Counted from the first letter of the stretch, positions 15,760 to 62,640 are shown. The stretch: DNA of 64,000 bases from IMGVR_UViG_3300025141_000016:186001-250000; one strand, 5' to 3'. The notes: a model not told the origin generated them from the sequence alone. Numbers and translations are program-made.

Positions 15760-16200
15760 TCAGGCAGCGGACTCCTCGTCCTCCGCAGCCGCGACCTCGG
15801 TGGCACTGACCACTGAAACCGACAGAGCCGGGAAGGTCACCTTGCCCTTGCAGTCGGTCAGGGTCGGTCCCTTGACCGCAGCGATAGCGACCTTGGCCCT
15901 CTTCTTGAGGGACGCGATCAGCTTGGGGTCGGCGGTGAGGGCTTCGCGGGTGAGGGAATCGACGGTCACGCCGTTGAGGTGGCTCAATGCCGCAGCCAGG
16001 AGCGTCCAGGGGTCAGCCTTGGCCACGATGGGCTGGGTGTAGTCATCACCGCAACGGGTAGTGGCGACCGTGTGCAGGGTGACGATCTCGTCCACGTCGT
16101 TATCCCCGACGGGGAGGTCAGCGCGGGTCGCGGATTTCGCAGCGGCGAGCGCCTTATGAAGTGCCGCGATGGTCGCGGGGGAGAGGGAAGTGAGGTCCAT
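15760..16200 (-). CDS. hypothetical protein
   Basis: ATG 16200 after hairpin and GGAGA; has its own class E promoter. Confidence 0.75.
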   Translation of the reverse strand: MDLTSLSPATIAALHKALAAAKSATRADLPVGDNDVDEIVTLHTVATTRCGDDYTQPIVAKADPWTLLAAALSHLNGVTVDSLTREALTADPKLIASLKKRAKVAIAAVKGPTLTDCKGKVTFPALSVSVVSATEVAAAEDEESAA

Positions 16201-16274: not shown

Positions 16275-16307
16275 TATACGGAGAAGCAAGGGGGAGTTGA
16301 ACCCCCC
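16275..16307 (-). promoter_or_regulatory. class E promoter GGGGGGTTCAAC-N15-CGTATA
   Basis: One of eight copies with invariant spacing. Confidence 0.8.
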
Positions 16308-16328
16308 TCCGTCGAGAAAGTTGAGGGT

Positions 16329-16610
16329 TTAGAACGGCATGTCTTGGTCGTCTGCGGCCCAGGCGGGGATGACGGGTTGGTCCTGGGGCACCACAATGTC
16401 ATCCCCCGACGGCGTGTACCCGTAGATTTCGGCGGCAGTGGGCTCCCGCTCGTCCTCGTCCGGTTCGGGTCCGTAGACCACAGCAGCCAGGAGGTCGTGG
16501 CACCGTGCGAGTTCGGCTTCCTGCTGCTCTGGGAGCAGGGAGGGTGAGCGGTAGCCAGCGAGGGCGAAGTACGCCTCGCGGATGGTGGAGAGCAGTTCAG
16601 CGTGGGTCAT
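16329..16610 (-). CDS. hypothetical protein
   Basis: GGAG RBS; acidic C-terminus ending DDQDMPF. Confidence 0.65.
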   Translation of the reverse strand: MTHAELLSTIREAYFALAGYRSPSLLPEQQEAELARCHDLLAAVVYGPEPDEDEREPTAAEIYGYTPSGDDIVVPQDQPVIPAWAADDQDMPF

Positions 16611-16789
16611 GTGGCTCCGGGGGTGGTCTGTTCGGGCGAAGGTGCGTCAGGGTGCCATCCACACTTGAAGCAGCCCTTCCTCGTGTAGATGCCCACCTCT
16701 CCTTTGGGGAGGAAGGTCACGACGTTCTTGATGGCCTTTTTCTTACCGCACTGTTGGCACTTGGTCTTGATGGTCATGGTGCCGGTCAT
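16607..16789 (-). CDS. small Zn-ribbon protein
   Basis: CQQC...CFKC. Confidence 0.55.
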   Translation of the reverse strand: MTGTMTIKTKCQQCGKKKAIKNVVTFLPKGEVGIYTRKGCFKCGWHPDAPSPEQTTPGAT

Positions 16790-16807
16790 GGGAGGTTCCA
16801 GAGAGGG

Positions 16808-16984
16808 TCAAAGGGTGTAGTCGATCTCGACCACCCCCCGCTCGGGGGCGGGGTCCGGTCGTTCCAGCACAGGACGGGGAGGCACAGGACGAGGTGCATA
16901 GAGGGGGAGCCGTCGGCGCTCGCTCTCGCGTTCCTCACGCTCGCGGCGTTCGCGCTCGATGATGGCTGGGTGGATGTGGGTCAT
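16808..16984 (-). CDS. 58-aa charged protein (below the ORF-track cutoff)
   Basis: MTHIHPAIIERERREREERESERRRLPLYAPRPVPPRPVLERPDPAPERGVVEIDYTL; GGAGG RBS directly after a class E promoter. Confidence 0.7.
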   Translation of the reverse strand: MTHIHPAIIERERREREERESERRRLPLYAPRPVPPRPVLERPDPAPERGVVEIDYTL

Positions 16985-17001
16985 AGTAGGGCCTCCACCC
17001 T

Positions 17002-17034
17002 TATACGGAGATAGGGGGGTGAGTTGAACCCCCC
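17002..17034 (-). promoter_or_regulatory. class E promoter
   Basis: GGGGGGTTCAAC-N15-CGTATA. Confidence 0.8.
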
Positions 17035-17052
17035 AAAACCAAGTATTCGGGT

Positions 17053-17138
17053 GTGACAGTCACGTTTTGGGCGCGGTTTTGCCTGTGACAGTCACGTTTG
17101 AAAACGTGACTGTCACGTTTAGGGGGTGTGACAGTCAC
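17053..17138. repeat. palindrome array (four perfect GTGACWGTCAC)
   Basis: Units at 17053, 17085, 17106 and 17128. Confidence 0.9.
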
Positions 17139-17156
17139 GTTTAGGGGGTGTGGGGG

Positions 17157-17453
17157 TCAAGCGGTCCCTGCGGTGGCCTCGACCTCTTCCCAGCCGAAGG
17201 AAGCGCATCGGAGGACACGTCCATCCGACAGGCGGATGCGGTCACCGACGGAGGTGGAGCGGCATCCCTCACCAGGGAAGGTCGAGGTGACCAGAGCGTT
17301 CTCCCACCAGTAGTGTTCGATGGTGTTGGTCAGTTCAAAGACGCGGGGGTAGTCCGCGTCGGGCAGGTCCACATCAGCGACGTGGATGAACTCGGTGGGC
17401 TCCGGCCCGGACCCGAAGGTGGGGCGAGTGGCGTGAAAGACTGCGATGGACAT
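17157..17453 (-). CDS. YodL-like domain protein
   Basis: VFELTN...RSTSVGD...FGWEEV resembles the YodL RS[LM]SVGD motif; ATG 17453. Confidence 0.6.
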   Translation of the reverse strand: MSIAVFHATRPTFGSGPEPTEFIHVADVDLPDADYPRVFELTNTIEHYWWENALVTSTFPGEGCRSTSVGDRIRLSDGRVLRCASFGWEEVEATAGTA

Positions 17454-17514
17454 GGGCGCTCCTGTTGGCCTCTCGATGAGGCTCGTGGGGATGAGGGAAG
17501 GTTCTCTCACCCCC

Positions 17515-17547
17515 TATACGGAGATAGGAGGCCGAGTTGAACCCCCC
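17515..17547 (-). promoter_or_regulatory. class E promoter
   Basis: GGGGGGTTCAAC-N15-CGTATA. Confidence 0.8.
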
Positions 17548-17548
17548 C

Positions 17549-17762
17549 TGTCGTAAATAGGTAGAGCGCCGTCGGCCTTACTCAACCAGAAAGGTCTTTC
17601 GCCCCACCGGAGAGTAGCCTCGGGCGGGTGTCGTAAATCGGAAGGGCACCGTCGGGCTTACTCAACCGGAAAGGTCTTTCGCCCCACCGAGGAGTAGCCT
17701 CGGGTGTCGTAGATAGGCAGAGCCCCGTTGGGCTTACTCAACCGGAAAGGTCTTTCGCCCCA
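17549..17762. repeat. tandem repeat of a 76-80 bp unit (about 2.7 copies), possibly a structured RNA
   Basis: Units at 17549, 17629 and 17705 share CTTACTCAACCRGAAAGGTCTTTCGCCCCA; inverted partial copy at 18035-18060. Confidence 0.85.
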
Positions 17763-18052
17763 ACTTGCGGGGGGTGGAACCACAGGTCCAGTTCTGGAAC
17801 CACAGGTCCAGGGGCGCTCCCCCGTTGTTGTAAAAACCCCTGATCGGGGTGTCATCAGAACGGCGTGCGCGAAAACCCCAGTGAAGGCAAGGGTTTAGCG
17901 AATCGGGCGGCCCCGAGGACATCCCCGAGACCTCGGACGACATCGCTGTGGGAGGCTTGTGGGGTCAGATCGGTGACCCCACGGGTGAGACTACCGCCGT
18001 CTCGGACGGCAGCCGTTCCCCGTGGAACACGGGTCAACGGTGCCCTTCCGAT

Positions 18053-18574
18053 CTACGACACCCACTCGCCCCCACCGATGAAGGCCACGTCGGACCACAT
18101 CTCGGTGTTCAGGTCCAGTTGTCCTGGCACTATCCCACCGAGCGCGGTGTTCAGGTCGCGAATGATGTTGAAGGCGAGGTCGAAGTCTACGTCCTGAATC
18201 GCCCGTAGGGCTCTGCGGAGCCACGGAGCCATGGAGAGCCCTTCCTCCTCGGCCTGCTCTATCTCCTCTTGGGAGAAGACCGAGGGGACTTCCTTGCCGG
18301 TGTCTACATCGGTGCCGTTCACCTCGACGTTCCACCACCACCACACCTCACGGGACAGCCGGAGGTAGGGGTGGGTCTGGAGGTGGCCCCGGATGAGGGC
18401 ATCTCCTCCCACGTCCCTGACGAGCAGGGTCCGTCGGAACGTGCCGAGGGTCGAATCGGGCGGGAAGCTGTCGAGGTTTGCGGCACTCTCCAGCCGTTCG
18501 GCGTGCCGGGTTTCCAGCACGGTGTTGATCTCCATCTCGGAGAGGGGGAACAGGACGCGGATAGGGGTAGTCAT
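18053..18574 (-). CDS. hypothetical protein, paralog of 3772-4275
   Basis: GGAGG RBS; FPLSEMEI...PWLRRALRAI...MWSDV. Confidence 0.75.
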   Translation of the reverse strand: MTTPIRVLFPLSEMEINTVLETRHAERLESAANLDSFPPDSTLGTFRRTLLVRDVGGDALIRGHLQTHPYLRLSREVWWWWNVEVNGTDVDTGKEVPSVFSQEEIEQAEEEGLSMAPWLRRALRAIQDVDFDLAFNIIRDLNTALGGIVPGQLDLNTEMWSDVAFIGGGEWVS

Positions 18575-18641
18575 CGGGCACCTCCACAGGGGTAGACGCA
18601 GGGGGGTGTCCACTTCGCACACTTGGGGGGCCAGAAACGAC

Positions 18642-18673
18642 AAAAGCCCCCACTCCCAGGCGGGAGTGGGGGC
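18642..18673 (-). terminator. intrinsic terminator
   Basis: GCCCCCACTCCC-GCCT-GGGAGTGGGGGC-TTTT. Confidence 0.75.
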
Positions 18674-18764
18674 GGCGGATGTGTAGTCGGGGGGATGGGG
18701 GCTGAAACCCACCGCCCACGACCCCGAACAAGGCATCTGGGGGGCCGTGAGGGCGGGCAGGAGG

Positions 18765-19217
18765 TCAGGTAGGCTTGAAGCCCACCCTGGGAGTGGGTTC
18801 GGCTCGTTCGATGGCTTTGAGCACGTCTGGCACCTCGCCAGAAGCCTTGCGGGTCTTGATGACCGCATCAATGTCCTTGCGAGCGTCGTACCGCACGTTC
18901 GTCACGAAGTAAGTGTCGAAGCAGTCTCCGAGGACGTGGCGCACCACGTCCCAATCAGTGCCCTTGCGAGCCTTGAACCGGGGCGACGGGAACGTCACGG
19001 ACACGCTTCCAGCATCGGTGTCGTAGTGGACGTGGCTCTCGTCCCCCCGCTGGGTAGACGCAAGGTCACGAAGGAGAGCCTTCAGGGGGTCCAGAGCCTC
19101 CTGGGCGTTAGAGATATGGCCCGCGAGGCGGCAAGCCACGCGGGCGATTTCCTGGGCGCTGCCCCCGCGCTTGGCGAGGTCAGTGGCTTCGGTAATGAGG
19201 GGGGTCAGGTCTTTCAT
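18765..19217 (-). CDS. hypothetical protein
   Basis: ATG 19217 after GGAG. Confidence 0.7.
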   Translation of the reverse strand: MKDLTPLITEATDLAKRGGSAQEIARVACRLAGHISNAQEALDPLKALLRDLASTQRGDESHVHYDTDAGSVSVTFPSPRFKARKGTDWDVVRHVLGDCFDTYFVTNVRYDARKDIDAVIKTRKASGEVPDVLKAIERAEPTPRVGFKPT

Positions 19218-19268
19218 GGGGATACTCCAGGGGCCGGTTGGACACCGACCCAAAAGTGGGTCAGGTGT

Positions 19269-20150
19269 CTACAGCGCGATGGCGCACTCCGTGTGGAAGA
19301 CTCCACGCCCTTCAACATGGGCAGCGGTGGCGTTGGCCTCGATGGTGCCCTTGCATCCCTCTGCCGAGCAGACGCAGGCGAAGGGGACCACGACGGTCGA
19401 GTAGTCAACCGAGGAAGTGGTGGCCTCGGGAGTCGGAGCCATGGACGTTTTCAGGGCAGCTACCAACCGCGCACGTTCGGCAGCGAGTTCGGCCTCGGCC
19501 TTGGCGACCTCGGCAGCGAACTCAGCATCGAGTTCGGAGGCCACCGTCGCCAGGGTGGTGATGGTCGATGCTTGGCACAGCCCAGCCAGAGGGCACCCCT
19601 CGCACTGCGAAGACCGTGAGGACCACAGGCTGAAGCAGTGGGTGTTGTCGATGGCCACGCGCCGGAGGTCAGCCTCCGTAGCGTAGGACCCGGCAGTCAC
19701 GGCACCGACGGGGGGCAGGTAAGCCATCCCCGAATCCTCGGTGATCACGGAGATCGCCGCTGGGGCTTCCTCGGTGGCTTCCTCGGTGACCATCTCGGTC
19801 AGGGTGACCGCTGCCATCGTCTCTACCTCGGTAGCCTCGGTGACTTCCGGTGCTGGCGCAGCAGCCAACTCGGAGGCCAAGGCGTAGTACCCGCGACGTG
19901 GGTTGACGGCCATACCGTCCTTCTTCAAGCGCCCACCCGCGAGGGTGACGGCTCGGTGTCCGGCGAAGTAGGGCTTGCCCCGCTTCATCTTCGTGCCCCA
20001 GGTACCCCAGCCAGGGAAATCGGTCAGGGACTCGATATGGGCGATCACGTCGCGGAACCGTACTTCCTCCCCTCGGGGTCCGAGGGCGCGGAGCGCGGCC
20101 AGGACATAGGGCATCCAAGCCGTGGTTTCCAGGGTGGTCGGGAAGTTCAT
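19269..20150 (-). CDS. Mrr-N-like winged-helix protein with Cys-rich C-terminal domains
   Basis: VLAALRALG...RLKKDG...PRRGYYAL; CEGCPL...C; CVC...HTEC. Confidence 0.6.
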   Translation of the reverse strand: MNFPTTLETTAWMPYVLAALRALGPRGEEVRFRDVIAHIESLTDFPGWGTWGTKMKRGKPYFAGHRAVTLAGGRLKKDGMAVNPRRGYYALASELAAAPAPEVTEATEVETMAAVTLTEMVTEEATEEAPAAISVITEDSGMAYLPPVGAVTAGSYATEADLRRVAIDNTHCFSLWSSRSSQCEGCPLAGLCQASTITTLATVASELDAEFAAEVAKAEAELAAERARLVAALKTSMAPTPEATTSSVDYSTVVVPFACVCSAEGCKGTIEANATAAHVEGRGVFHTECAIAL

Positions 20151-20226
20151 GGGGTGTCTCCAGTTGCCTCGCTCGATGCGGGTCATGGGGATGGGGTGAA
20201 AGGGTGCGGGGACGCCCCTACACTTC

Positions 20227-20259
20227 TATACGGAGAAGCAAGGGGGGGTTGAACCCCCC
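20227..20259 (-). promoter_or_regulatory. class E promoter
   Basis: GGGGGGTTCAAC-N15-CGTATA. Confidence 0.8.
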
Positions 20260-20271
20260 TGCCTGTTGGTT

Positions 20272-21489
20272 TCAGTCAGTTTCCTCGTCAGTGAAGCAAC
20301 CGCCGGTCACCACAGCGTCGATCAGGCGCATCGCGATGGTCCGAGAGTCCTTGTCCAGCCGGTGCAACCACGCTGCGAAACCCCTCTTCAAGAGGTTGGC
20401 AGGAGGGGTGCCGTCGGACAGCCAGAGCACGTCTTCGCACTCCGACAGGACTTCACACAGACCACGGTGGGTGAACTCCGCGTAGAGTTCTTCCGACTCG
20501 ATAGCCGCACGAATCTTGTCCGTAGCCTTGCCCAACTGGTCGATGACGGCAGGTGCCGCTTCTACCAGCGCCGGGTACTTCGACCGCAGGATCGCGGACT
20601 CATCATCCCAGTGCATGTGGGTGAACTCAACGAACCGACCCATCCGGTCGAGGATCGAAGCATCCATCCGCTGACTCGACATACGACCCGTCTCGTCACC
20701 CGTACCGCAGGAGTTCGCGGTGAAAGCGAACTGCGTTCCAGGGAACAAGGTGTGGACTTCACCCGTCGGACCAACGATCCGCTTGGAGGTGGTGTCCAGG
20801 GTCAACCGGAACTCCTCAATCTGCTCGGGGGTGCCCCGGTCAACATCGGAGAACAGGATCAGCGCGGGACGCGCAACACCGTCGGTTCCAACAACACCGT
20901 TGACGATGGCGTTCCAGAGAGTCCCGTAGGACCATGAGGTGCCAGCGTCGGTGATCTCGCGGGAGTAGAACCACCGCTTCACTTCCGTACCCGGAGTGAA
21001 GGTGTAGGCGAACGCCGGAGTGCGGGTGTAGCTGGAGAAGGCGTGAACCACCGCATCCTTACCGGTTCCGGGGCCACCCCAGATGAACACGGCACGCTTC
21101 TTGGCGAGGGCCAGGAGCGCACGCTGGTAAGCGGTGCGTGCCTTCCCTTTGGTGGGGAACGCATAGGCCCAGGGGAGGGGCAGGCAGAAGTGGAGGGGAA
21201 TCCCATGGTCCACTCGACACACGACTCCGAGGAGATCGCGGGTCAGGTCGGTGACCTCGGGAGCCGCCTTACGCCGCTTCCCTTTGAGGGCGCGGTCAAA
21301 GGCATCCAGAGCCTTGGTGCTGACGGTGAGAGCGCCAGGGTGAGCATCGAGGTACGCCTCGGGGGTCATCCCGTGAGCCTCGACCACATGGTCGAGCAGG
21401 GAGTGGGCGCGGTGTCCACACTCGATGCACTCGACGCGACCATCAACCACCGTGAGGTTGGGCGCGAGAGCAGTTGCAGCAGCAGGCAT
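20272..21489 (-). CDS. MoxR/CobS-like AAA+ ATPase with N-terminal C2H2 Zn finger
   Basis: CIEC...H...H; Walker A GGPGTGKD; atypical Walker B LILFSDVD; TANS; ASILDR. Confidence 0.85.
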   Translation of the reverse strand: MPAAATALAPNLTVVDGRVECIECGHRAHSLLDHVVEAHGMTPEAYLDAHPGALTVSTKALDAFDRALKGKRRKAAPEVTDLTRDLLGVVCRVDHGIPLHFCLPLPWAYAFPTKGKARTAYQRALLALAKKRAVFIWGGPGTGKDAVVHAFSSYTRTPAFAYTFTPGTEVKRWFYSREITDAGTSWSYGTLWNAIVNGVVGTDGVARPALILFSDVDRGTPEQIEEFRLTLDTTSKRIVGPTGEVHTLFPGTQFAFTANSCGTGDETGRMSSQRMDASILDRMGRFVEFTHMHWDDESAILRSKYPALVEAAPAVIDQLGKATDKIRAAIESEELYAEFTHRGLCEVLSECEDVLWLSDGTPPANLLKRGFAAWLHRLDKDSRTIAMRLIDAVVTGGCFTDEETD

Positions 21490-21574
21490 TGGGAGTCTCC
21501 AGTTGGCCTCTCGATGAGGCATAGGGAAGATGAAAGGGAACAGGATGGGGGGGTGTGCTCACCCCCTGCACCCA

Positions 21575-21607
21575 TATACGGAGATAGGGGGGTGAGTTGA
21601 ACCCCCC
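21575..21607 (-). promoter_or_regulatory. class E promoter
   Basis: GGGGGGTTCAAC-N15-CGTATA. Confidence 0.8.
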
Positions 21608-21626
21608 TGGAGGAAGAAAAGGTAAG

Positions 21627-21653
21627 AAAACTGACCCCCCGGAGGGGGTCAGT
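21627..21653 (-). terminator. intrinsic terminator
   Basis: ACTGACCCCC-TCCG-GGGGGTCAGT-TTT immediately after the VWA gene. Confidence 0.7.
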
Positions 21654-21657
21654 GAGA

Positions 21658-23307
21658 TTAGCGGAACCCGCCACTGGCCATCAGGCCGTCCAATGCGGCC
21701 TTCTTGGCGTGCTTCGGGAACACGATGGTCGAGATAGTCTCCATCATGCGCTTGGCCAGGGTATCCAAACTCGGGACCGTGACGTGCAACGGGAACAGGT
21801 TGGTCACAGCGTACCCGTCCTCGCCAATGCCCACGCCGATGACGAAGATGCCAGCCTCGGCAGCGAGCCGAATCTGGCGACGAACGACGCGGGGGCAGTC
21901 GGGCTGACCGTCAGTGAGCACCAGAATCACCCGATACCGCTCCTCGCGAGTGGACAACTCCTGCATGGCGAACTGGATGCCGTCAGACAGAGGCGTGCCC
22001 CCAGAAGCCGTGTAGCTACCGAAGCGGTCCTTGCAGGTTCGGAAGGGCTCATCCCAATCCTTGAAAAGATCGATCCGAGCACCCGAGATCCGGTGGAACG
22101 AAGCGTCGTCTTCGTTGTACTGCTCGGTCGTCGTGTAGGGAGCCCGACGACCGTTCCGAGGACCACAGCACATGACCGGAGAACCCAGGGTGTCGAACGC
22201 CTCGGCCATAGCGACCATCGCTGTCGCTGCCGACCGAGCGCGACTACCACGCATCGAGCCCGACTGGTCACCAACGACTGCGACCGCGATGGACACATCG
22301 TCCGACTTGACGTTCTGGAAGTAGGGGCGGCTGGGCCGGATACCCGACTTGATCTCGATGAACGACTCAACCAGACGACGCTCCGAGAGATCCTTTCCAC
22401 GGCGGGTGCCATGAATGACCTTCTTGGTCTTGGCCATCAGGAACTTCGCCCGGAACTGCGAGCGGATGCCCGCAGTCAGGAGTCGGGCATCATCCCGGTA
22501 AATCTTGGCCATGCCATTGTAGCCCCCGCTGGGACGAACGATCTCATCCAGGCTCGGGTCGAAGGGTCGCCAAACCTGCTCATAATCGAGGCAATCGTCA
22601 TCGCGCTCACCCTCGGTGGCACTACCCATCGCCTCGTTGTTGTCGAGCAGGTCCGTGTCGTTCGCTTCCAGAGCAGCCAGGAGGCCATCGAGAAACGCCT
22701 TGGGATCATCGCCCAGGTCGCAGTGACCCCCAGCCAGTGCATCCGAACCGGCACCCTCGGCACCGGGGTCACCGAAGTCATCGGAACCGTCACCGGCTGC
22801 GCCATCGGAGTCACCACCGGAGTCGCCACCGGAGTCACCACCGGAGTCGCCATCGGAGTCGCCGTCACCGTCTCCGTCTCCGTCGCCCGAGCCTTCGCCC
22901 TCACCGTCGGAGTCATCACCCTCGGAGTCGCCATCACCGGAGCCTTCACCGTCGGTGTCTTCGTCGGTATCCTCACCGCCCTCACCGTCGGAGCCTTCAC
23001 CGTCGGAGCCTTCACCGTCGGCATCAGTGTCGGCATCTTCACCGTCGCCTTCACCGTCGCCTTCACCGTCGCCTTCACCGTCGGTGTCTTCGTCGGTATC
23101 CTCGGTGTCTTCGTCGGTATCCTCGGTGTCATCACCCTCCGAGCCCTCGCCACCCTCGGGGGTGCCGTCGGTCTCGTCGGACTTCTCACCGTCGCCGTCG
23201 CCGTCGCCGGACCCGTCGCTGTCATCCTCGCGGGGCAGCGGAGCGAGGTCCATGTTGGACCCCACCAACTCGGTTCCGAGTCGGAGCATGTAATCGAAAA
23301 GAGCCAT
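21658..23307 (-). CDS. CobT-like VWA (MIDAS) protein with a long D/E/G/S-rich linker
   Basis: DQSGSM, GGTPL, VLTDGQP, IGVGIG; acidic low-complexity tract at about 22730-23225. Confidence 0.85.
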   Translation of the reverse strand: MALFDYMLRLGTELVGSNMDLAPLPREDDSDGSGDGDGDGEKSDETDGTPEGGEGSEGDDTEDTDEDTEDTDEDTDGEGDGEGDGEGDGEDADTDADGEGSDGEGSDGEGGEDTDEDTDGEGSGDGDSEGDDSDGEGEGSGDGDGDGDGDSDGDSGGDSGGDSGGDSDGAAGDGSDDFGDPGAEGAGSDALAGGHCDLGDDPKAFLDGLLAALEANDTDLLDNNEAMGSATEGERDDDCLDYEQVWRPFDPSLDEIVRPSGGYNGMAKIYRDDARLLTAGIRSQFRAKFLMAKTKKVIHGTRRGKDLSERRLVESFIEIKSGIRPSRPYFQNVKSDDVSIAVAVVGDQSGSMRGSRARSAATAMVAMAEAFDTLGSPVMCCGPRNGRRAPYTTTEQYNEDDASFHRISGARIDLFKDWDEPFRTCKDRFGSYTASGGTPLSDGIQFAMQELSTREERYRVILVLTDGQPDCPRVVRRQIRLAAEAGIFVIGVGIGEDGYAVTNLFPLHVTVPSLDTLAKRMMETISTIVFPKHAKKAALDGLMASGGFR

Positions 23308-23414
23308 CTGTGTCTCCGGGGCCTCTCGATGAGGCGGGGAAGAAAGGAAAGGAGTCGGGTCTTATTTAGGTCGAACCCGAGAAACGACCGGGGGTGTGCT
23401 CACCCCTACACTTC

Positions 23415-23447
23415 TATACGGAGATACCCAAGGGAGTTGAACCCCCC
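23415..23447 (-). promoter_or_regulatory. class E promoter
   Basis: GGGGGGTTCAAC-N15-CGTATA. Confidence 0.8.
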
Positions 23448-23461
23448 TGGGCATAGGTTTT

Positions 23462-24562
23462 TTAGTCGTCTATGACCACCGCAAACTTCAAGCCCTGACG
23501 GCCATCAGCATCCGGCAGACCAGCGAAGGTCACCTCGACAATCTCGCCAGCGTGGGGTCCGACCTTGGCGCGAGCCCTGTCACCCACCCGGAAGACGGGG
23601 AACTTCGGGGCCTTGCCAGAGCCGCCCTCACCCTCGCCTTCCGACGGGGGACCGGGAGGTCCAGGCTCACTCTCACCACCACCATCGTTGGAGGGGGGTG
23701 GGGAAGCCGGGGGTGTGTCGTGGCCCAACGCCACCAGCAGGGCAACGATTTCCATCGCCAGCCACCAGTGCCCAAGGTCATCCTCGGGGGTCAGTGCAAT
23801 CGCACGGTCGAGCAAGGGCTTCAACGGACCCTCCGTCACCAGACGCCAACCAGCCGGGGACCGCTCACGGTAACCAGCCAGGGCTTCGTTCTGGCGGTCG
23901 GTGTCGTAGCCGAGTCCGAGATCACGGAAAGCACCCATCACGACCGAGAGGTCGTTGTGGGGGTCAATCCCTCGGTGCTCGGAAGCCTCACGACCCTCGG
24001 ACTCCATCTTCAAGATCAAATCCTGCAAGTCAGCCATCTTGTCAGGGGCACCAGGGTACTTGGCACACCCACACCGCTCGATGCGAATGTCCTCAATGAT
24101 GTTGCCCCAGGTCAACACGGCACCGATGTAGGGTCGCCAGTCAGCCAGGAGTGTCCAACGCTCGGACAGCGGACCCCACACGTCTTCTATGGTGAGGTCA
24201 CGACGGCAGGAGTATTCGGTGTGCCACGCCTCGTGGTAGTCACCACCGATCCCCGCACGCGCCAGCCAGAGGGGGATGCGGTCGGGGTTGGTCGCCACGA
24301 CGATGTGGGGGTCAGAGACATAGGTGGCGTTGGCAGCGTTGAGGGCATCCTCGACCATCTCATAGCTGAACTCGTTGCCATAAGACACCGATTCACACAG
24401 CTTCCCCTGCATCACGCGGCAAGTCCACTTGTCCTTGTTGAAGAAGGAGGAGCCTCGTGCGAGTACCTTACGAGCATCCGCTGTCCGAGGGTCAAGGATA
24501 GCGTTGACCGAAGCCTGATGGCTCGCGGCCCACTTCTTGCCGTTGATGGTGAGTTCAGCCAT
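23462..24562 (-). CDS. HExxH protein resembling the N-terminal half of CobT-like VWA partners
   Basis: YHEAWH...NIIEDIRIE...YPGA; ATG 24562. Confidence 0.7.
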   Translation of the reverse strand: MAELTINGKKWAASHQASVNAILDPRTADARKVLARGSSFFNKDKWTCRVMQGKLCESVSYGNEFSYEMVEDALNAANATYVSDPHIVVATNPDRIPLWLARAGIGGDYHEAWHTEYSCRRDLTIEDVWGPLSERWTLLADWRPYIGAVLTWGNIIEDIRIERCGCAKYPGAPDKMADLQDLILKMESEGREASEHRGIDPHNDLSVVMGAFRDLGLGYDTDRQNEALAGYRERSPAGWRLVTEGPLKPLLDRAIALTPEDDLGHWWLAMEIVALLVALGHDTPPASPPPSNDGGGESEPGPPGPPSEGEGEGGSGKAPKFPVFRVGDRARAKVGPHAGEIVEVTFAGLPDADGRQGLKFAVVIDD

Positions 24563-24637
24563 GGGGTGTCTCCGGGCCTCTCGGTGAGGCGTGGGAAAAG
24601 GTGAAAGGGGTGGGGGTGTAGATGACCCCCGCACCCC

Positions 24638-24670
24638 TATACGGAAATGCCAGGGGTAGTTGAACCCCCC
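24638..24670 (-). promoter_or_regulatory. class E promoter
   Basis: GGGGGGTTCAAC-N15-CGTATA. Confidence 0.8.
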
Positions 24671-24761
24671 TCCGGCAAGTTTTCTGCTGGAGGCCCAAAA
24701 TAAGTGGTGGTGGCTGACCCCCTGTGTGCGACAAGCCCCCCGACCCTCGGGCGTAGCCCAA

Positions 24762-24806
24762 GGGGAGAACCGTCCATCCCCCTAAAGGGGATGGACGGTT
24801 CTCCCC
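24762..24806. repeat. perfect 20-bp inverted repeat
   Basis: GGGGAGAACCGTCCATCCCC-CTAAA-GGGGATGGACGGTTCTCCCC. Confidence 0.95.
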
Positions 24807-24857
24807 GACCGGGGGTGCCAGCCGGGGGTGCCAGCCGTGCGGCCCGTCCCCCCTCCG

Positions 24858-24893
24858 GTGCATGAGTATGCACCCCCACGCATACTCATGCAC
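24858..24893. repeat. perfect 14-bp inverted repeat
   Basis: GTGCATGAGTATGC-ACCCCCAC-GCATACTCATGCAC. Confidence 0.95.
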
Positions 24894-25087
24894 GGTCTGT
24901 TCAGTGCCACAACGTCCGATAACGTACATTATGTCAAGTAGCGGGAACGGGCGAACCTGGGTTTTCGCCGTCCGTTCAGGTGAACACCTGTTCACACTGA
25001 ACACCCCTCTGTTCAGTGTCCCGTATGCACCGAATATGCAGGGACGGGGCCTACCCCCCTGGGGTAACCGTTACTTTTCTTGCCGAA

Positions 25088-25120
25088 GGGGGGTTCAACT
25101 CGGGCCGGTATCTCCGTATA
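25088..25120 (+). promoter_or_regulatory. class E promoter (divergent copy)
   Basis: GGGGGGTTCAAC-TCGGGCCGGTATCTC-CGTATA. Confidence 0.8.
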
Positions 25121-25182
25121 GAAGTGGAAGGACACCCCCCACCGATTCCCGCGCCCCATCGAGGGGCCATAGGAGACACCCC

Positions 25183-25776
25183 ATGAAGAAAGGACTCACC
25201 GTCGTCGTGCGCGAGCACGCTGACCTCTGGCGACCCGTCACTGCCGAGGAGACGGCAGAGTGGTACGCATCCCCCGAGAGTAAGGGGATGGACTGCGCTG
25301 GCGAGAGCAAGCTGCCACCCAGGTCTGTCTACCGCCGTGACACCAGCGGCACCTACACTGTCACACGCGCCCGCGTGAACGCTCCCCGTGGCTGGGGCTC
25401 GCTGCCCAAGTGCTCGGAGATCATGGACCTCGATGGAGTCCTCTGGTTCTGCCGCCGCCGTGACCTGCACTCCCTGACCCCCGTGACCCCCACGGTCAGC
25501 ACGATGGCCCCCGCGAGGGACGGCCTCGACGCGGAGATCGAGGAGTGGGTCGCCAAGGTCAACGCCAAGTACCCTGGCAGTCGCACCATCGAGTGGGGCC
25601 GCAAGTACGCCAAGGTCGTCCGTGGTGGCTCGGTCTACTGCTTCGTGGTCCGAAGCAACGGGGACATTATGAAGGCAGCCAACTGGCGAGCCCCGGCCAA
25701 GCACGCTCGCGGCAACATCCGTGACGCTGACCCGCTGGCTGGCGTGACCGACTACGGCGCAGCGTACCTCCGATGA
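25183..25776 (+). CDS. two-domain hypothetical phage protein
   Basis: ATG 25183 after hairpin and GGAGA; C-terminal GSVYCFV...GDIMKAANWRAPAKHARGNI motif, which I recall from phage proteins (not searched). Confidence 0.75.
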   Translation: MKKGLTVVVREHADLWRPVTAEETAEWYASPESKGMDCAGESKLPPRSVYRRDTSGTYTVTRARVNAPRGWGSLPKCSEIMDLDGVLWFCRRRDLHSLTPVTPTVSTMAPARDGLDAEIEEWVAKVNAKYPGSRTIEWGRKYAKVVRGGSVYCFVVRSNGDIMKAANWRAPAKHARGNIRDADPLAGVTDYGAAYLR

Positions 25777-26765: not shown

Positions 26766-27223
26766 AAACACACCCCAACGCCGACCTGTCAGAACCGACG
26801 ACAAAACCCCTGGGGGGGTACCGGCCCCCCCTGTTGGCCACATTGAAACCGCGTCCAAAATCGGAACGCTAATCCCAACCCCCCTTGGACAAACCCTTTG
26901 AAGGGTTGACCTCCACACAGACCCCCCTTCGCTGGAAGGCCCCCCTTTCTGTGTGCGTCCGAGGGGCGACTCCCCGAATGGCAAGTGGCTGTTGGTGGCC
27001 CTTTCTTATCTGGCGGTCACAGGTGTCCTCCCCCCGGTCACAGGTGTCCGGGCGTGATCCCACGATCCCTTTCGTCGCCGGTACGGTCCAGGGCACCATG
27101 GGAACCGACAGGAACCCATAGGAAATGACAGGCAAGCAGTTGAAACATAGGCGCTTTCTATCGGGGGGTGGTGTCGTCTGGGGTCTGGGTACAGATGAAG
27201 CGCACCCCTCACCAGAAGCACCC

Positions 27224-29499: not shown

Positions 29500-29565
29500 C
29501 CAAGAGGAGGGGGGTCCATTGTTGCTCCGTTCCGGTAAGGGGATTCTGACACGGAGGACTCCCCT

Positions 29566-33405: not shown

Positions 33406-33575
33406 GGTGGGGGTGTGTTCACCAAGACGGCCAGTTCCTTGTATTCACGAACCCCATTCCTTGTAATCACATTTCCAATCGTGACTTTCACACCCTGGAG
33501 GGGGGTTGTGGGGTTTCCGAATCCGGTAATACCGATTTGGAAACTTGACTGTCACAACCCTCCGAGGGAGAGAAC

Positions 33576-40974: not shown

Positions 40975-40989
40975 ATAGACGACCTACCG
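40975..40989 (-). promoter_or_regulatory. class L promoter motif
   Basis: CGGT-AGGTCGT-CTAT, 29 nt before ATG 40946; back-to-back with the 40999 copy. Confidence 0.65.
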
Positions 40990-40998
40990 CCCCCCAAT

Positions 40999-41013
40999 CG
41001 GTAGGCCGCCTAT
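40999..41013 (+). promoter_or_regulatory. class L promoter motif
   Basis: CGGT-AGGCCGC-CTAT, 43 nt before ATG 41056. Confidence 0.65.
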
Positions 41014-57587: not shown

Positions 57588-57638
57588 TTGCCATCCTCGT
57601 GAGCACTACTACCCAGATGCGGTGCGGGCCAACCCCCC

Positions 57639-59135: not shown

Positions 59136-59150
59136 CGGTAGGAGCCCTAT
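59136..59150 (+). promoter_or_regulatory. class L promoter motif
   Basis: CGGT-AGGAGCC-CTAT, 29 nt before GTG 59179. Confidence 0.65.
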
Positions 59151-60773: not shown

Positions 60774-61229
60774 ATGAGCGCATCCCCCCAGAAAGTAGCC
60801 GAGCGGTGGGCCTCCGAAGCCAAGTTCTTCCGTGGCCTCCACAGTCGCAACAAGGGCATCTTCTTTCGTGGGGCCAAGAACCCCGGTGCCGGTGGCGGGG
60901 CTGGCTTTGGTGCTCTGGGACGTGGCCTTTATCTCGCGTGGGACAAGGGGATCGCCCAGTTCTTTGCTGACCGAGCCGGGGGTCAGGTATACGCCTACAA
61001 GATTCCGTCCAGCCTCAAACTGCTCGATGCCCAGAGCAGCGAGATGGCGACGATCAAGGAAGGGATGGGATTCAAGCCCTGGCAGTATTCAGACGATCCC
61101 ATGTACGCCGCTGTCGTCACAGCCGAGGTAAAAGACCTTGGATACGACGGGGTGATCTCCGACAAAGCGGCAGATGGCCTTGTCTTGTTCGATCCCCGTA
61201 AAGCGAAGCTGGTGGACCTACCGGAGTGA
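60774..61229 (+). CDS. tag-B ADP-ribosyltransferase-like protein
   Basis: SPQKVAERW; FFRG...LGRGLYLA...GYDGVI...LVLFDP. Confidence 0.7.
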   Translation: MSASPQKVAERWASEAKFFRGLHSRNKGIFFRGAKNPGAGGGAGFGALGRGLYLAWDKGIAQFFADRAGGQVYAYKIPSSLKLLDAQSSEMATIKEGMGFKPWQYSDDPMYAAVVTAEVKDLGYDGVISDKAADGLVLFDPRKAKLVDLPE

Positions 61230-62384
61230 TGCAGCGACGGCGTAGGACTCGCCGGGAGCCTCGTCCAGAAGCCCCTGCTCACAGAGGTATGCGATTGCGC
61301 GGCGGGTGTCGGCAGCGTCGAGCCGGAGGTCTGACTGGATTTCCTCGCGGGTTGACCATGGCTCATCGGCCACGAGCCGCAGGATGCGTTCGGCGTTTCC
61401 AACGGTGACTGGACCGTCACGAAGAGACTTGCGAACTCGTCCGGCAAGGTGGGCTGCTCGGAGGGTGGAGACACCTTCGCTGGCAGCGATCTCATCGCGG
61501 GTAGCCCCAGCGATCAAAGCGTCGTAGACCCGCTGATAACGCTCGGCGGCTCCTCGGTGGGCAGCACGGACGAGAGCACGACCGCCTGTGGTCTGGATTG
61601 TGTCTTCGTCGGTGAGGATGAGCATATCTTCCGGGCTCGGGCTCCGAGAGATGATCACCTCATGGAGATCATCCTCGTCTCCCTCGTAGGCGACTTCCCA
61701 CTCGGTCCCCTGGTTGGCCCGCTGGCAAACGTACTCGGGGGATTCTGTCTCGACGCGAACTCGGATCTCGTGCTGGGTCCGTGCCCCACGCATCCGAGCG
61801 AGGGGTTCTGCGCCTCGGACGAAGACGCTGGAGAAGTGCTTGCGCTTCAGAAACTTGTAGAGCGTGGAGAGCGATACGGTGCCTTTCTCGGCCAGTGCCT
61901 TGTCGAAGGTGCCACCTGCGGCCCATTTGGCGATCCAGAGCCCCGTCAACGAGAGACATTCGGCGTAGTCTTCGGAGGGGTAGTCGCGGGAGAGCAGCGC
62001 GGCGAGTCGGCGGTCCAGGGCGCGGTCGCGCAGTTGGGCTTCCAGCCATTCTGATGAGGTCAGCGGTGCGGCTTCATCGACCAGGGAGGAGAGGTGGGTC
62101 GTCACCGTCTCGTGGTCGTCTGACCGGAGGTGGGAGAGCAGCCCAGCCGCGTCACCCTGGAGAGCAGACCAGAGGTCAGCGCAGAGGAGGGCTTGTGAGC
62201 CGGTGCCCCGGTAGCCGTTCTGGTTCACGGAGTCGCGTCGAACGATACTCCGTTTGCGGGCCGTGGCTTTGGCGAGGTCGGTGATCCCGGCTGCGACCAG
62301 CGATTCAACTTCGCTGGGAGTCTGGGGGGAAGCACCGTGGATGAGATCGAGCAGGGAGAGCAGGTATGAGAGTCGTCGGGTCAT
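61218..62384 (-). CDS. sigma-factor-like protein (region 4 HTH) with an extra C-terminal winged helix
   Basis: PSPEDML...RVYDALIAGATRDEIAASEGVS...RVRKSLR; STREEIQSDLRL...LCEQGLL. Confidence 0.6.
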   Translation of the reverse strand: MTRRLSYLLSLLDLIHGASPQTPSEVESLVAAGITDLAKATARKRSIVRRDSVNQNGYRGTGSQALLCADLWSALQGDAAGLLSHLRSDDHETVTTHLSSLVDEAAPLTSSEWLEAQLRDRALDRRLAALLSRDYPSEDYAECLSLTGLWIAKWAAGGTFDKALAEKGTVSLSTLYKFLKRKHFSSVFVRGAEPLARMRGARTQHEIRVRVETESPEYVCQRANQGTEWEVAYEGDEDDLHEVIISRSPSPEDMLILTDEDTIQTTGGRALVRAAHRGAAERYQRVYDALIAGATRDEIAASEGVSTLRAAHLAGRVRKSLRDGPVTVGNAERILRLVADEPWSTREEIQSDLRLDAADTRRAIAYLCEQGLLDEAPGESYAVAASLR

Positions 62385-62497: not shown

Positions 62498-62526
62498 ATC
62501 CTATCCGCCGTGACCCTATGGGTCAA
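62498..62526 (-). promoter_or_regulatory. sigma70-like promoter for the 62384 gene
   Basis: TTGACC-N17-TAGGAT. Confidence 0.45.
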
Positions 62527-62625: not shown

Positions 62626-62640
62626 CGGTAGGTCGTCTAT
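62626..62640 (+). promoter_or_regulatory. class L promoter motif
   Basis: CGGT-AGGTCGT-CTAT, 45 nt before ATG 62685. Confidence 0.65.

What the first reader, a model, noticed from the sequence alone, without database searches (positions are those of the whole stretch)
16275..25120. Eight-copy ECF-like promoter regulon GGGGGGTTCAAC-N15-CGTATA
Seen: copies at 16275, 17002, 17515, 20227, 21575, 23415 and 24638 (all minus) and 25088 (plus), with an invariant 15-nt spacer that usually ends TCTC. All point away from 24.7-25.0 kb, and most genes in the block have their own copy. Established: ECF sigma promoters typically carry AAC at -35 and CGT at -10. An alternative reading is TTCAAC-N17-TATA. Inference: early or middle promoters read by a dedicated sigma, plausibly one of the two sigma-like genes at 61-64 kb.
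Basis: partly seen in the sequence, partly recalled or inferred. Interest (0 to 1): 0.7.

Follow-up and report, generated by a model that had tools for sequence, protein, structure and literature searches.

The report
Phage sigma-dependent promoter set in megaphage
The repeated GGGGGGTTCAAC-N15-CGTATA element is a real family of promoters in an uncultured marine giant phage, most likely read by the host's RNA polymerase guided by a phage-made sigma factor, a known strategy seen here in a new phage family.

Summary
There are 8 exact copies in the window (0.02 expected) and 22 in the 297-kb phage record, all between genes and pointing at the next gene. Each copy has a T-rich tract, GGGGGGTTCAAC, a fixed 15-nt spacer and CGTATA.

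Related phages keep the (C)CGTA block and the spacing but use a different upstream block: GGGGGTTCC (32 copies), CGTTAAAA (17) or GGTTGGAGC (14). One of them has fully variable spacers. This is the signature of a two-part sigma-type promoter, not a T7-type or host sigma-70 promoter. No phage RNA polymerase was detected in this record or in near-complete relatives.

Three sigma-related phage proteins were found.
- The 388-aa gene at 61.2-62.4 kb has weak but consistent sigma-like fold matches. Its helix-turn-helix co-varies with the upstream block across four phage types. It also carries the genome's only intergenic sigma-70-type promoter.
- A clearer 306-aa sigma, outside the window, does not co-vary with the upstream block.

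The likely order is host sigma, then the 388-aa sigma, then these promoters driving delayed-early genes. No transcription data exist.

Two further promoter classes and a shared leader hairpin were also found. The finding is a new member of a known kind.

The parts
16275..16307 (-). Class A promoter copy 1 (GGGGGGTTCAAC-N15-CGTATA), upstream of a 146-aa gene at 15760-16200(-)
   Evidence: Exact match; gene map; no Pfam family
17002..17034 (-). Class A promoter copy 2, upstream of small ORFs at 16329-16984(-)
17515..17547 (-). Class A promoter copy 3, upstream of a 98-aa gene at 17157-17453(-)
20227..20259 (-). Class A promoter copy 4, upstream of a 293-aa gene at 19269-20150(-) and two further genes
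21575..21607 (-). Class A promoter copy 5, upstream of a 405-aa AAA_5/MoxR-like ATPase at 20272-21489(-). An intrinsic terminator-like hairpin at 21630-21653(-) lies just upstream.
23415..23447 (-). Class A promoter copy 6, upstream of a 549-aa VWA-domain protein at 21658-23307(-)
24638..24670 (-). Class A promoter copy 7, upstream of a 366-aa gene at 23462-24562(-)
25088..25120 (+). Class A promoter copy 8, the only plus-strand copy, upstream of a 197-aa DUF7717 protein at 25183-25776(+)
24577..24589 (-). Leader RNA hairpin (4-bp stem, A-Y-Y-G-A loop, then CCAA and GGAG) 25-32 nt before the start codon. Sister copies are at 17469-17481(-), 21507-21519(-), 23322-23334(-) and 25154-25166(+).
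   Evidence: 13 intergenic copies genome-wide with 7 different stems, almost all in class A leaders; no Rfam family
61218..62384 (-). 388-aa sigma-like protein with an extra C-terminal winged helix; the best candidate reader of class A
   Evidence: Atlas features nearest to sigma clusters, 0.92. PDB top 17 are Thermus sigma-A. AFDB Swiss-Prot top 13 are all sigma factors. Winged helix at residues 323-388, Z about 11. Helix-turn-helix co-varies with the class A upstream block.
62498..62526 (-). Sigma-70-type promoter TTGACC-N17-TAGGAT in front of the 388-aa gene
   Evidence: the only intergenic instance in 297 kb; conserved as TTGACC-N17-TACAAC in G003 and G016

Best explanation
The element is a class of promoters (class A) of an uncultured marine myovirus-type giant phage. 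Host core RNA polymerase, carrying a phage-encoded sigma-family protein, binds a two-part site. The upstream block GGGGGGTTCAAC acts as the -35, preceded by a T-rich UP-like tract, and the downstream block C-CGTATA acts as the -10, 15 nt further on. Transcription most likely starts a few bases downstream, near a conserved GTG. Each copy drives a short transcription unit, often bounded by a terminator. These units encode nucleic-acid-metabolism and takeover-type genes: an NAD-dependent DNA ligase operon, a polynucleotide-kinase-like protein, a phosphoesterase, MoxR/VWA proteins and many small unknown proteins. The most likely reader is the 388-aa sigma-like protein at window 61218-62384(-), which is itself made from a host sigma-70-type promoter. 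The order would then be host sigma, 388-aa sigma, class A, making class A delayed-early or middle. Shown here: the copies, their placement, the two-block conservation in relatives, the sigma-like proteins and the covariation. Inferred: that transcription starts there, which sigma reads it, and the timing. My sub-probabilities: it is a promoter, about 0.9; it is read by a phage-encoded sigma on host core polymerase, about 0.8; that sigma is the 388-aa protein, about 0.5.
For: (1) Eight exact copies against 0.02 expected, and 22 genome-wide, all intergenic and co-oriented with the next gene. (2) Relatives found through a shared protein keep the (C)CGTA block and the spacing but have different upstream blocks: G005 has GGGGTTC-N17-CGTA 32 times against 1 in the control, with variable spacers; G003 has T-tract...CGTTAAAA-N15-CCGTAAGTA-GTGA 17 times against 0; G002 and G016 have GGTTGGAGC-N12-CCGT 7 times each against 0. 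(3) A T-rich tract sits at a fixed distance upstream in both G000 and G003, where the alpha-subunit UP element of bacterial polymerase lies. (4) No sigma-70-type promoter occurs in the block (0 found, 1.3 expected). (5) No beta, beta-prime or T7-type polymerase was detected in G000 or in four relatives at least 90% complete. (6) Sigma-like proteins are present. The 306-aa protein's profile hits sigma-H at E = 1.2e-4 over regions 2-4, and nearly all of its best fold hits are sigma factors. For the 388-aa protein. A 202-aa protein matches Sigma70_r4 at 6e-15. (7) Covariation: the 388-aa helix-turn-helix is 60% identical between G000 and G005, which share the GGGGGTTC block, against 31% for the rest of the protein (Fisher p = 0.007). 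It differs in G003 and in G016, which use other blocks, and G016 also has a 6-aa insertion. Region 4 of the 306-aa sigma does not track the block. (8) The 388-aa gene carries the only intergenic sigma-70-type promoter in 297 kb, conserved in two relatives. (9) Precedents: phage 7-11 gp47 reads a two-part GTAAtg-(16)-aCTA promoter and phiEco32 gp36 reads tAATGTAtA, both on host core polymerase, with starts 6-9 bp from the element (PMC8948821, PMC12276001).
Against: There is no transcript evidence: no RNA run was listed and no host is known. The sigma-likeness of the 388-aa protein rests on weak scores. Foldseek E-values are 0.035-0.3, there is no Pfam, PHROG or PDB-sequence hit to a sigma, and hhalign aligns only the helix-turn-helix, at probability 16%. 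The covariation rests on four promoter types and one key pair. G003 and G016 differ in upstream block but are 64% identical in the helix-turn-helix, about the same as the rest of the protein. The record is about 67% complete, so another factor could lie in the unseen part. In 20 of 22 copies the G-run can pair with a C-rich start of the spacer, which a plain sigma model does not need. Divergent phage polymerases can escape Pfam, and the PF00940 control rang nowhere.
Confidence: 0.6

Rival explanations
1. Class A is read by the 306-aa ECF/sigma-H-like sigma (G000:107568-108488, minus strand, outside the window) on host core polymerase, not by the 388-aa protein.
For: It is the best-supported sigma of the genome: the profile hit to sigma-H spans regions 2-4 at E = 1.2e-4 and essentially all top fold hits are sigma factors, including ECF sigmas. 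A two-domain sigma suits a two-part -35/-10 site with a CGT -10. It is present in every relative that has a class A-type motif, although those relatives were found through this protein.
Against: Its region 4 helix does not follow the class A upstream block. G002 and G003 are 88% identical there yet use GGTTGGAGC and CGTTAAAA. G000 and G001 share the block yet are only 50% identical there. Its own gene is preceded in six genomes by a different, conserved motif, GGGGGGT-N17-yGGTAy (class C). By the usual self-regulation of ECF sigmas, that would make class C its target.
Confidence: 0.22
2. Class A is read by a host sigma (an alternative or ECF sigma, or an unusual housekeeping sigma) without any phage factor, so these are immediate-early promoters.
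For: The element can be read as TTCAAC-N17-TATAGG, a loose sigma-70 form. By my own recollection, not tested here, the CGTATA -10 with an AAC-containing -35 resembles the Bacillus sigma-W consensus TGAAAC-N16-CGTATA. The genes served look early.
Against: The upstream block differs completely between phages whose shared proteins are 50-67% identical, which is unexpected if a conserved host sigma reads it. The invariant C and G before TA are not sigma-70 features, and the T at -7 is missing. The generic scan finds 0 sigma-70-type sites in the block. The genome holds fewer sigma-70-like sites than its reversed-sequence control (4 against 19).
Confidence: 0.07
3. Class A is the promoter of a phage-encoded RNA polymerase that was not detected, such as a hairpin-recognising N4-type virion polymerase, a T7-type enzyme, or a very divergent multisubunit enzyme. 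It could lie in the unseen third of the genome or be one of the giant unknown proteins.
For: The near-invariance of 19 positions in 22 copies, and TATA followed by G(A/G)(A/G)G, recall T7/SP6-type promoters. In 20 of 22 copies a G-run/C-run hairpin can form (86% at or below -9 kcal/mol, against 21% for other G-runs). The phage encodes a 3818-aa protein of unknown function.
Against: No PF00940, Rpb2_6 or Rpb1_2 match occurs in G000 or in four near-complete relatives. The 3818-aa protein has no PHROG match, and a T7-type motif B pattern turned up only once by regex, in an unrelated 926-aa protein. In G005 the spacer is not conserved, so the site is two blocks, not one contiguous block. The element with its T-tract spans about 50 bp, and the hairpin is centred near -30, not near -12 as in N4. 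The hairpin is absent from most G003 sites.
Confidence: 0.07
4. The element is not a promoter. It could be a repressor or activator operator, a terminator, or a recombination or packaging repeat.
For: Two copies were flagged as terminator-like by the generic scan, with a G6...C6 stem followed by CTTGCTTCTC. The invariance suggests a sequence-specific protein site.
Against: All 22 copies point the same way as the next gene and lie at promoter distance from its start. Several follow a true terminator. The hairpin is not followed by a proper T-run, and the two-block layout with a fixed gap matches promoters.
Confidence: 0.04

Closest known systems
Salmonella phage 7-11 late promoters read by the phage sigma gp47 (PMC8948821)
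   Same: The phage sigma uses host core polymerase. The consensus is two-part with a fixed spacer (GTAAtg-(16)-aCTA). There are a handful to tens of copies in front of phage genes, and related phages have diverged motifs.
   Different: The sequence is different and the phage family is unrelated (a 90-kb podovirus against a megaphage of over 300 kb). There the promoters are late, whereas here the genes look early or middle. Here the upstream block is 12 nt, preceded by a T-tract, and at least two further promoter classes exist.
Escherichia phage phiEco32 gp36 sigma with gp79 (PMC12276001, PMC8948821)
   Same: The phage sigma is so divergent that sequence searches barely recognise it. It redirects host core polymerase to middle and late promoters, and its C-terminal domain contacts the -35 region. 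PDB 9m7y of this system appeared among the fold hits of the 306-aa sigma (rank 11).
   Different: The phiEco32 consensus is a single element, tAATGTAtA. No gp79-like partner was sought here. The 388-aa protein is larger and has an extra winged helix.
Bacterial ECF (group 4) sigma promoters, such as the Bacillus subtilis sigma-W consensus TGAAAC-N16-CGTATA (from my own knowledge, not tested here)
   Same: A CGT(A) -10 block, an AAC-ending -35 block in G000, a fixed short spacer and high information content.
   Different: The spacer is 15 nt, not 16-17. AAC is not conserved in related phages. The best candidate reader resembles group 1-3 sigmas, not ECF sigmas. No anti-sigma was identified.
Bacillus phage SPO1 sigma cascade (gp28, then gp33/gp34) and T4 gp55 (general knowledge; PMC13401047 for SPO1)
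   Same: Successive phage sigma-like proteins give successive promoter classes on host core polymerase. The late class is a short element near -10, as class B is here, and it precedes structural genes.
   Different: All sequences and proteins are unrelated, and the order of events here is inferred, not measured.

Membership tests
Sigma-70-family-dependent two-part promoter | Two conserved blocks separated by a spacer of fixed length whose sequence is free | tested here: met
   N15 is invariant in 22 copies. In G005 the blocks are conserved in 32 sites while the spacers vary.
Sigma-70-family-dependent two-part promoter | Intergenic, co-oriented with the downstream gene, at leader distance from it | tested here: met
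   22 of 22 copies; 18-107 nt to the start codon in 21 of 22
Sigma-70-family-dependent two-part promoter | Transcription starts 5-10 nt downstream of the -10 block | not testable with these tools
   No RNA run was listed. Only a conserved GTG five bases after CGTA, in G000 and G003, hints at a start region.
Sigma-70-family-dependent two-part promoter | A cognate sigma is available | tested here: inconclusive
   Sigma-like proteins exist. Assignment to the 388-aa protein rests on covariation in four types. The complex predictor does not handle DNA.
ECF (group 4) sigma promoter | AAC-type -35 and CGT-type -10 | tested here: inconclusive
   CGT is conserved in all relatives. AAC occurs only in G000 and G001, while the others have TTCC, TTAAAA or GGAGC.
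   The two-domain 306-aa sigma is preceded by class C, not class A, and its region 4 does not track class A. The better candidate resembles group 1-3 sigmas.
Host housekeeping (sigma-70) promoter | TTGACA-N16-18-TATAAT with A at -11 and T at -7 | tested here: not met
   0 sites in 15.0-26.5 kb against 1.3 expected. Read as TTCAAC-N17-TATAGG, the element lacks the T at -7.
T7-type single-subunit polymerase promoter | One contiguous conserved block of about 20 bp running into the start site, plus a T7-type polymerase gene | tested here: not met
   The spacer is not conserved in G005. There is no PF00940 match in G000 or in six relatives, but the control rang nowhere, so absence of the polymerase is not shown.
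N4-type hairpin promoter of a virion polymerase | A short hairpin (5-7 bp stem, 3-nt loop) centred about 12 nt before the start, plus a giant virion polymerase | tested here: inconclusive
   A hairpin can form in 20 of 22 copies, but with a 6-7-nt loop centred near -30, and in few G003 sites. The 3818-aa protein has no recognisable family.

The most novel reading that the evidence does not exclude
A family of uncultured marine megaphages (230-536 kb) runs its genes through a private three-tier transcription system on host core polymerase. A host-read immediate-early gene makes a divergent sigma with an added winged helix (388 aa), which reads class A. A 306-aa ECF-like sigma reads class C (GGGGGGT-N17-GGGTA), and a 202-aa region-4-only protein with a NusG-like neighbour reads the late class B (CGGTAG-N4/5-CTAT). 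The class A sigma and its 12-nt upstream block change together rapidly between sister phages, while the -10 block stays fixed. This would give each phage an orthogonal early programme, perhaps to avoid cross-activation or exploitation by co-infecting relatives. Class A messages would additionally share a leader hairpin operator for translational control.
Probability: 0.3. Interest if true: 0.7.

Novelty: new member of a known kind. Interest (0 to 1): 0.5.

Why it matters
Gene regulation in uncultured giant phages is almost unknown, because most of their genes have no recognisable function. Here the promoters themselves sort about a hundred genes into three classes and point to the proteins that read them. 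That gives a testable regulatory map for a whole family of marine megaphages without needing a culture. If the pairing of the 388-aa protein with its fast-changing upstream block holds, it would offer a natural set of mutually orthogonal sigma-promoter pairs sharing one -10 element, useful for studying how sigma-4 specificity evolves. If it does not hold, the finding is still a clean, ordinary example of a phage sigma regulon.

Tried and rejected
- Megablast of 10 kb against GenBank phages: no match.
- Motif scan of IMG/VR: the only hit was a near-identical 150-kb contig from the same sample, so not independent.
- RNA sequencing runs: none was listed.
- DNA runs laid on 20.1-26.0 kb: X4 holds a strain about 2-3% diverged whose contigs break at the promoter repeats. 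The variant list was truncated and the motif is too small a target, so it was not used as evidence.
- Complex prediction with the sigma and promoter DNA: not folded, because the tool has no verdict for DNA. It is not evidence either way.
- Pfam and PHROGs on the 388-aa and 478-aa proteins: nothing.
- PDB sequence profile of the 388-aa family: only the C-terminal winged helix.
- hhalign of the two sigma families: only the helix-turn-helix, and weakly.
- Close-homolog scans for the 388-aa and 478-aa proteins: only the twin contig.
- PHROGs on ten giant proteins: only a tail sheath, a virion protein and ParB-like hits; nothing for the 3818-aa protein.
- Rfam on 15-27 kb: only two chance-level hits.
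- Class C in distant relatives: not above the control.
- A first class B scan with the wrong spacing (N5 before CTATAC) gave noise and was redone.
- A simple residue-to-base code for region 4 of the 306-aa sigma: none emerged.
- A weak r4_2 hit in the 177-aa gene just after a class A copy: not confirmed by Pfam.
Full report
OBSERVATION. Dinucleotide-preserving shuffles predict 0.02 matches even with three mismatches allowed. The shorter core TTCAAC-N15-CGTATA finds the same eight and nothing else. An alignment with flanks shows 21 invariant columns inside the motif and two outside it.

The window is positions 186001-250000 of a 297,104-bp IMG/VR virus record of about 60% G+C, rated 67% complete. 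The whole record holds 21 copies within two mismatches, with 0 in the reversed-pattern control, and 22 with a slightly relaxed core. I built a gene map with a codon-usage-trained ORF picker (268 genes, 89% coding). On that map all 22 copies lie between genes and point the same way as the next gene, whose start codon lies 18-107 nt after CGTATA in 21 of 22 cases.

ANATOMY. The 22 copies share four features.
- A T-rich tract such as ACTTTTCTT lies about 8-12 nt upstream of the G-run.
- The 12-nt block GGGGGGTTCAAC is invariant.
- The 15-nt spacer begins C-rich (TC.CCCC) and ends in TATCTC or GCTTCTC.
- C-CGTAT(A/G) follows, then a purine-rich trinucleotide and GTG.

Several copies sit directly after an intrinsic terminator-like hairpin, for example 21630-21653(-). 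Genes in the block therefore form separate terminator-promoter-gene cassettes. The generic scan finds no sigma-70-type promoter between 15.0 and 26.5 kb (0 found, 1.3 expected).

The genes served include an AAA_5/MoxR-like ATPase, a VWA protein and a DUF7717 protein in the window. Elsewhere they include an NAD-dependent DNA ligase operon, a polynucleotide-kinase-like protein, a metallophosphoesterase and many small unknown proteins. This is an early or middle type of gene set, not a structural one.

RELATIVES. No GenBank phage matches at the DNA level. The only IMG/VR contig carrying the exact motif is a near-identical 150-kb contig from the same sample. Relatives were reached through a conserved 306-aa protein, which gave 16 loci in contigs of up to 536 kb. 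They carry variants of the element.

| Record | Class A form | Copies (control) |
|---|---|---|
| G001 | GGGGGTTCAA(A/C)...CTCCGTA | 3 (0) |
| G005 | GGGGGTTCC-N16-CGTA, spacers fully variable | 32 (1) |
| G004 | GGGGTTCC-N15-CCGTAAG | 1 (0) |
| G002, G016 | GGTTGGAGC-N12-CCGT | 7 each (0) |
| G003, G015 | T-tract...CGTTAAAA-N8-CTGCTTCCGTAAGTA-GTGA | 17 (0) in G003, 3 (0) in G015 |

The (C)CGTA block, the distance to the upstream block, the T-tract and, in G003, the GTG five bases after CGTA are all kept, while the upstream block itself has changed. A site made of two blocks at a fixed distance, with a free spacer and an A/T-rich tract where the alpha subunit's UP element lies, is what a bacterial holoenzyme promoter looks like. 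It is not what a contiguous T7-type promoter looks like.

WHICH POLYMERASE. Six-frame searches found no Rpb2_6, Rpb1_2 or T7-type RNA_pol domain in G000 or in six relatives, four of them at least 90% complete. The T7-type control rang nowhere, and very divergent phage polymerases can escape these models, so this is suggestive only. The 3818-aa protein and the other giant proteins have no polymerase-related PHROG match.

WHICH SIGMA. Three candidates emerged.

(a) A 306-aa protein at G000:107568-108488(-), outside the window. A profile of 15 orthologs matches RNA polymerase sigma-H (3mzy) at E = 1.2e-4 across regions 2 to 4. In its AlphaFold model (pLDDT 79.6), nearly all of the top 50 PDB matches are sigma factors, among them B. 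subtilis SigH, M. tuberculosis SigH, E. coli sigma-E, SigK, SigW and AlgU. The best E-value is 0.016, which is modest, as expected with a flexible linker between the two domains.

(b) A 202-aa protein at G000:271749-272357(+) with Sigma70_r4 at 6e-15 and no region 2. An unannotated NusG/KOW-like ORF lies just upstream of it.

- Pfam, PHROGs and a PDB sequence profile do not recognise it as a sigma.
- Its nearest clusters by protein-language-model features are sigma factors, at a score of 0.92.
- Its model (pLDDT 73.7) gives Thermus sigma-A as PDB hits 1-17.
- Sigma factors of groups 1-3 take ranks 1-13 in AFDB Swiss-Prot, with E-values from 0.035 to 0.28 covering residues up to about 322-333.
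- Residues 323-388 form an extra winged helix, with Z about 11.
- hhalign aligns its helix-turn-helix with region 4.2 of the 306-aa family in the same register, but weakly: E = 0.0016, probability 16%.

All three candidate families are conserved across this group of phages, so co-occurrence cannot assign the motif.

COVARIATION. Four independent promoter types can be paired with orthologs of both full-length candidates. The putative recognition helix of the 388-aa protein reads as follows.

| Type | Upstream block | Helix |
|---|---|---|
| G000 | GGGGGGTTCAAC | STLRAAHLAGRVRK |
| G005 | GGGGGTTCC | TVLRAGHLTARVRS |
| G003/G015 | CGTTAAAA | SVTRALTNRSKVRA |
| G016 | GGTTGGAGC | SEGRATTLKSKIRA, with six extra residues in the turn |

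G000 and G005 share the GGGGGTTC core. They are 60% identical in the 25-residue helix-turn-helix but 31% identical elsewhere (Fisher p = 0.007). Pairs with different blocks show no such excess (36% against 40%, and 32% against 41%).

The 306-aa sigma behaves in the opposite way. G002 and G003 use different blocks but are 88% identical in region 4. G000 and G001 use the same block but are only 50% identical there, against 67% elsewhere.

Two further points fit this. First, the 388-aa gene is preceded by TTGACC-N17-TAGGAT (62498-62526, minus strand). This is the only intergenic match to a relaxed sigma-70 pattern in the whole record, which has 4 matches in all against 19 in the reversed-sequence control. 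The promoter is conserved as TTGACC-N17-TACAAC in G003 and G016. Second, the 306-aa sigma gene is preceded in six genomes by a different conserved two-part motif, GGGGGGT-N17-(C/T)GGTA(T/C).

MODEL. The host holoenzyme transcribes the 388-aa gene first. Its product then replaces the host sigma on core polymerase and reads class A, turning on about 22 short transcription units for nucleic-acid metabolism and takeover. Class A is then delayed-early or middle. The ECF label is not established: AAC is not conserved, and the candidate resembles group 1-3 sigmas.

The main rival is the 306-aa sigma as reader (0.22). The lesser rivals are a host sigma alone (0.07), an undetected phage polymerase recognising a hairpin or a contiguous site (0.07), and a non-promoter role (0.04).

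One feature remains unexplained. In 20 of 22 copies the G-run can pair with the C-rich start of the spacer. Of class A sites, 86% fold at or below -9 kcal/mol, against 21% for other G-runs. The tendency is weaker in G005, and about a third of G003 sites show it, with different stem sequences.

OTHER PROMOTER CLASSES. Word enrichment in upstream regions revealed two more classes.
- Class B, CGGTAG(G)-N4/5-CTAT. About 60 intergenic, co-oriented copies lie mostly 40-60 nt before start codons, with 13 in the window against 1.15 expected. It precedes a tail-sheath gene, a DNA helicase and ParB-like genes. It is conserved unchanged in G003, G005 and G015, and in the distant G006, G010 and G013.
- Class C, GGGGGGT-N16/17-(C/T)GGGTA. 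There are about 22-25 copies, with 4 in the window against 0.58 expected. It is conserved in G003, G005 and G015 but is not above the control in distant relatives.

Class A shares its G-run plus T with class C, and class C shares GGTA with class B.

COMPARISON WITH KNOWN SYSTEMS. The nearest studied cases are phage 7-11 gp47, with the two-part GTAAtg-(16)-aCTA, and phiEco32 gp36, with tAATGTAtA. Both direct host core polymerase, with starts 6-9 bp from the element (PMC8948821, PMC12276001). The SPO1 and T4 cascades are the general model for this kind of control. This finding is a new member of that kind: a new consensus and new, very divergent sigma families in a family of uncultured marine megaphages.

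All claims about function are inferences from sequence and comparison. No transcription data could be obtained, and the complex predictor does not handle DNA.

Noticed in passing
window 62626-62640(+), 59136-59150(+), 40975-40989(-), 40999-41013(+) and 9 more; about 60 in G000: A second promoter-like class (class B), CGGTAG(G)-N4/5-CTAT, lies 40-60 nt before start codons. There are 13 in the window against 1.15 expected. It precedes a tail-sheath gene and a DNA helicase, and it is conserved unchanged in close and distant relatives.
   Followed up: partly
window 27164-27191(+), 29510-29537(+), 33501-33528(+), 57610-57637(-); G000:108531-108556(-), before the 306-aa sigma gene: A third class (class C), GGGGGGT-N16/17-(C/T)GGGTA, has about 22-25 copies. 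It is conserved upstream of the 306-aa sigma gene in six genomes. It shares its G-run with class A and its GGTA with class B.
   Followed up: partly
window 17469-17481(-), 21507-21519(-), 23322-23334(-), 24577-24589(-), 25154-25166(+): A leader RNA hairpin has a 4-bp stem of varying sequence (7 stem types), a constant A-Y-Y-G-A loop, then CCAA and GGAG, always 25-32 nt before the start codon. It occurs almost only in class A leaders, and a few copies are present in G003. It could be a translational operator or a stability element. No Rfam family matches.
   Followed up: partly
window 24680-25080: The 400-nt divergent region between the opposed class A promoters holds perfect palindromes at 24762-24806 (20-nt arms), 24858-24893 (14-nt arms) and 24994-25019 (10-nt arms). 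It also holds a 13-nt tandem repeat at 24809-24834 and TCTGTTCAGTG twice. It could be an origin or a regulatory hub.
   Followed up: no
class A copies, G-run to the first half of the spacer, e.g. window 21584-21607(-): In 20 of 22 copies the invariant G-run can pair with a C-rich stretch, giving a 5-7-bp stem with a TTCAAC(T) loop. This is far more often than for other G-runs in the genome. Some G003 sites have stems of different sequence around GTTAAAA. The role is unexplained.
   Followed up: partly
G000:271231-271750(+), L010 about 850-1370: An unannotated ORF with a NusG/KOW-like C-terminus (read by eye) overlaps the start of the 202-aa Sigma70_r4 protein gene, suggesting a small transcription-factor operon.
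   Followed up: no
window 24606-24638(-), 21550-21574(-), 23385-23414(-): The predicted 5' ends of class A transcripts can fold into a G/C-rich stem-loop (GTG.AGGGG...CCCC.CAC) right after the presumed start, which could stabilise the messages.
   Followed up: no
G000 whole record: Sigma-70-like sites (TTGAC[AC]-N16-18-TAnnn[TC]) are fewer than in the reversed-sequence control, 4 against 19. This could reflect avoidance of host-type promoters.
   Followed up: no
G000:155169-166625(+) (L072): A 3818-aa protein, and several others of 1700-2000 aa, have no PHROG match at all. The genome is largely uncharted.
   Followed up: partly
window 20272-21489(-), residues 5-47: The MoxR-like ATPase has a weak N-terminal match to the Ros/MucR zinc-finger regulator family (E = 1.3e-4, below the cutoff).
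   Followed up: no
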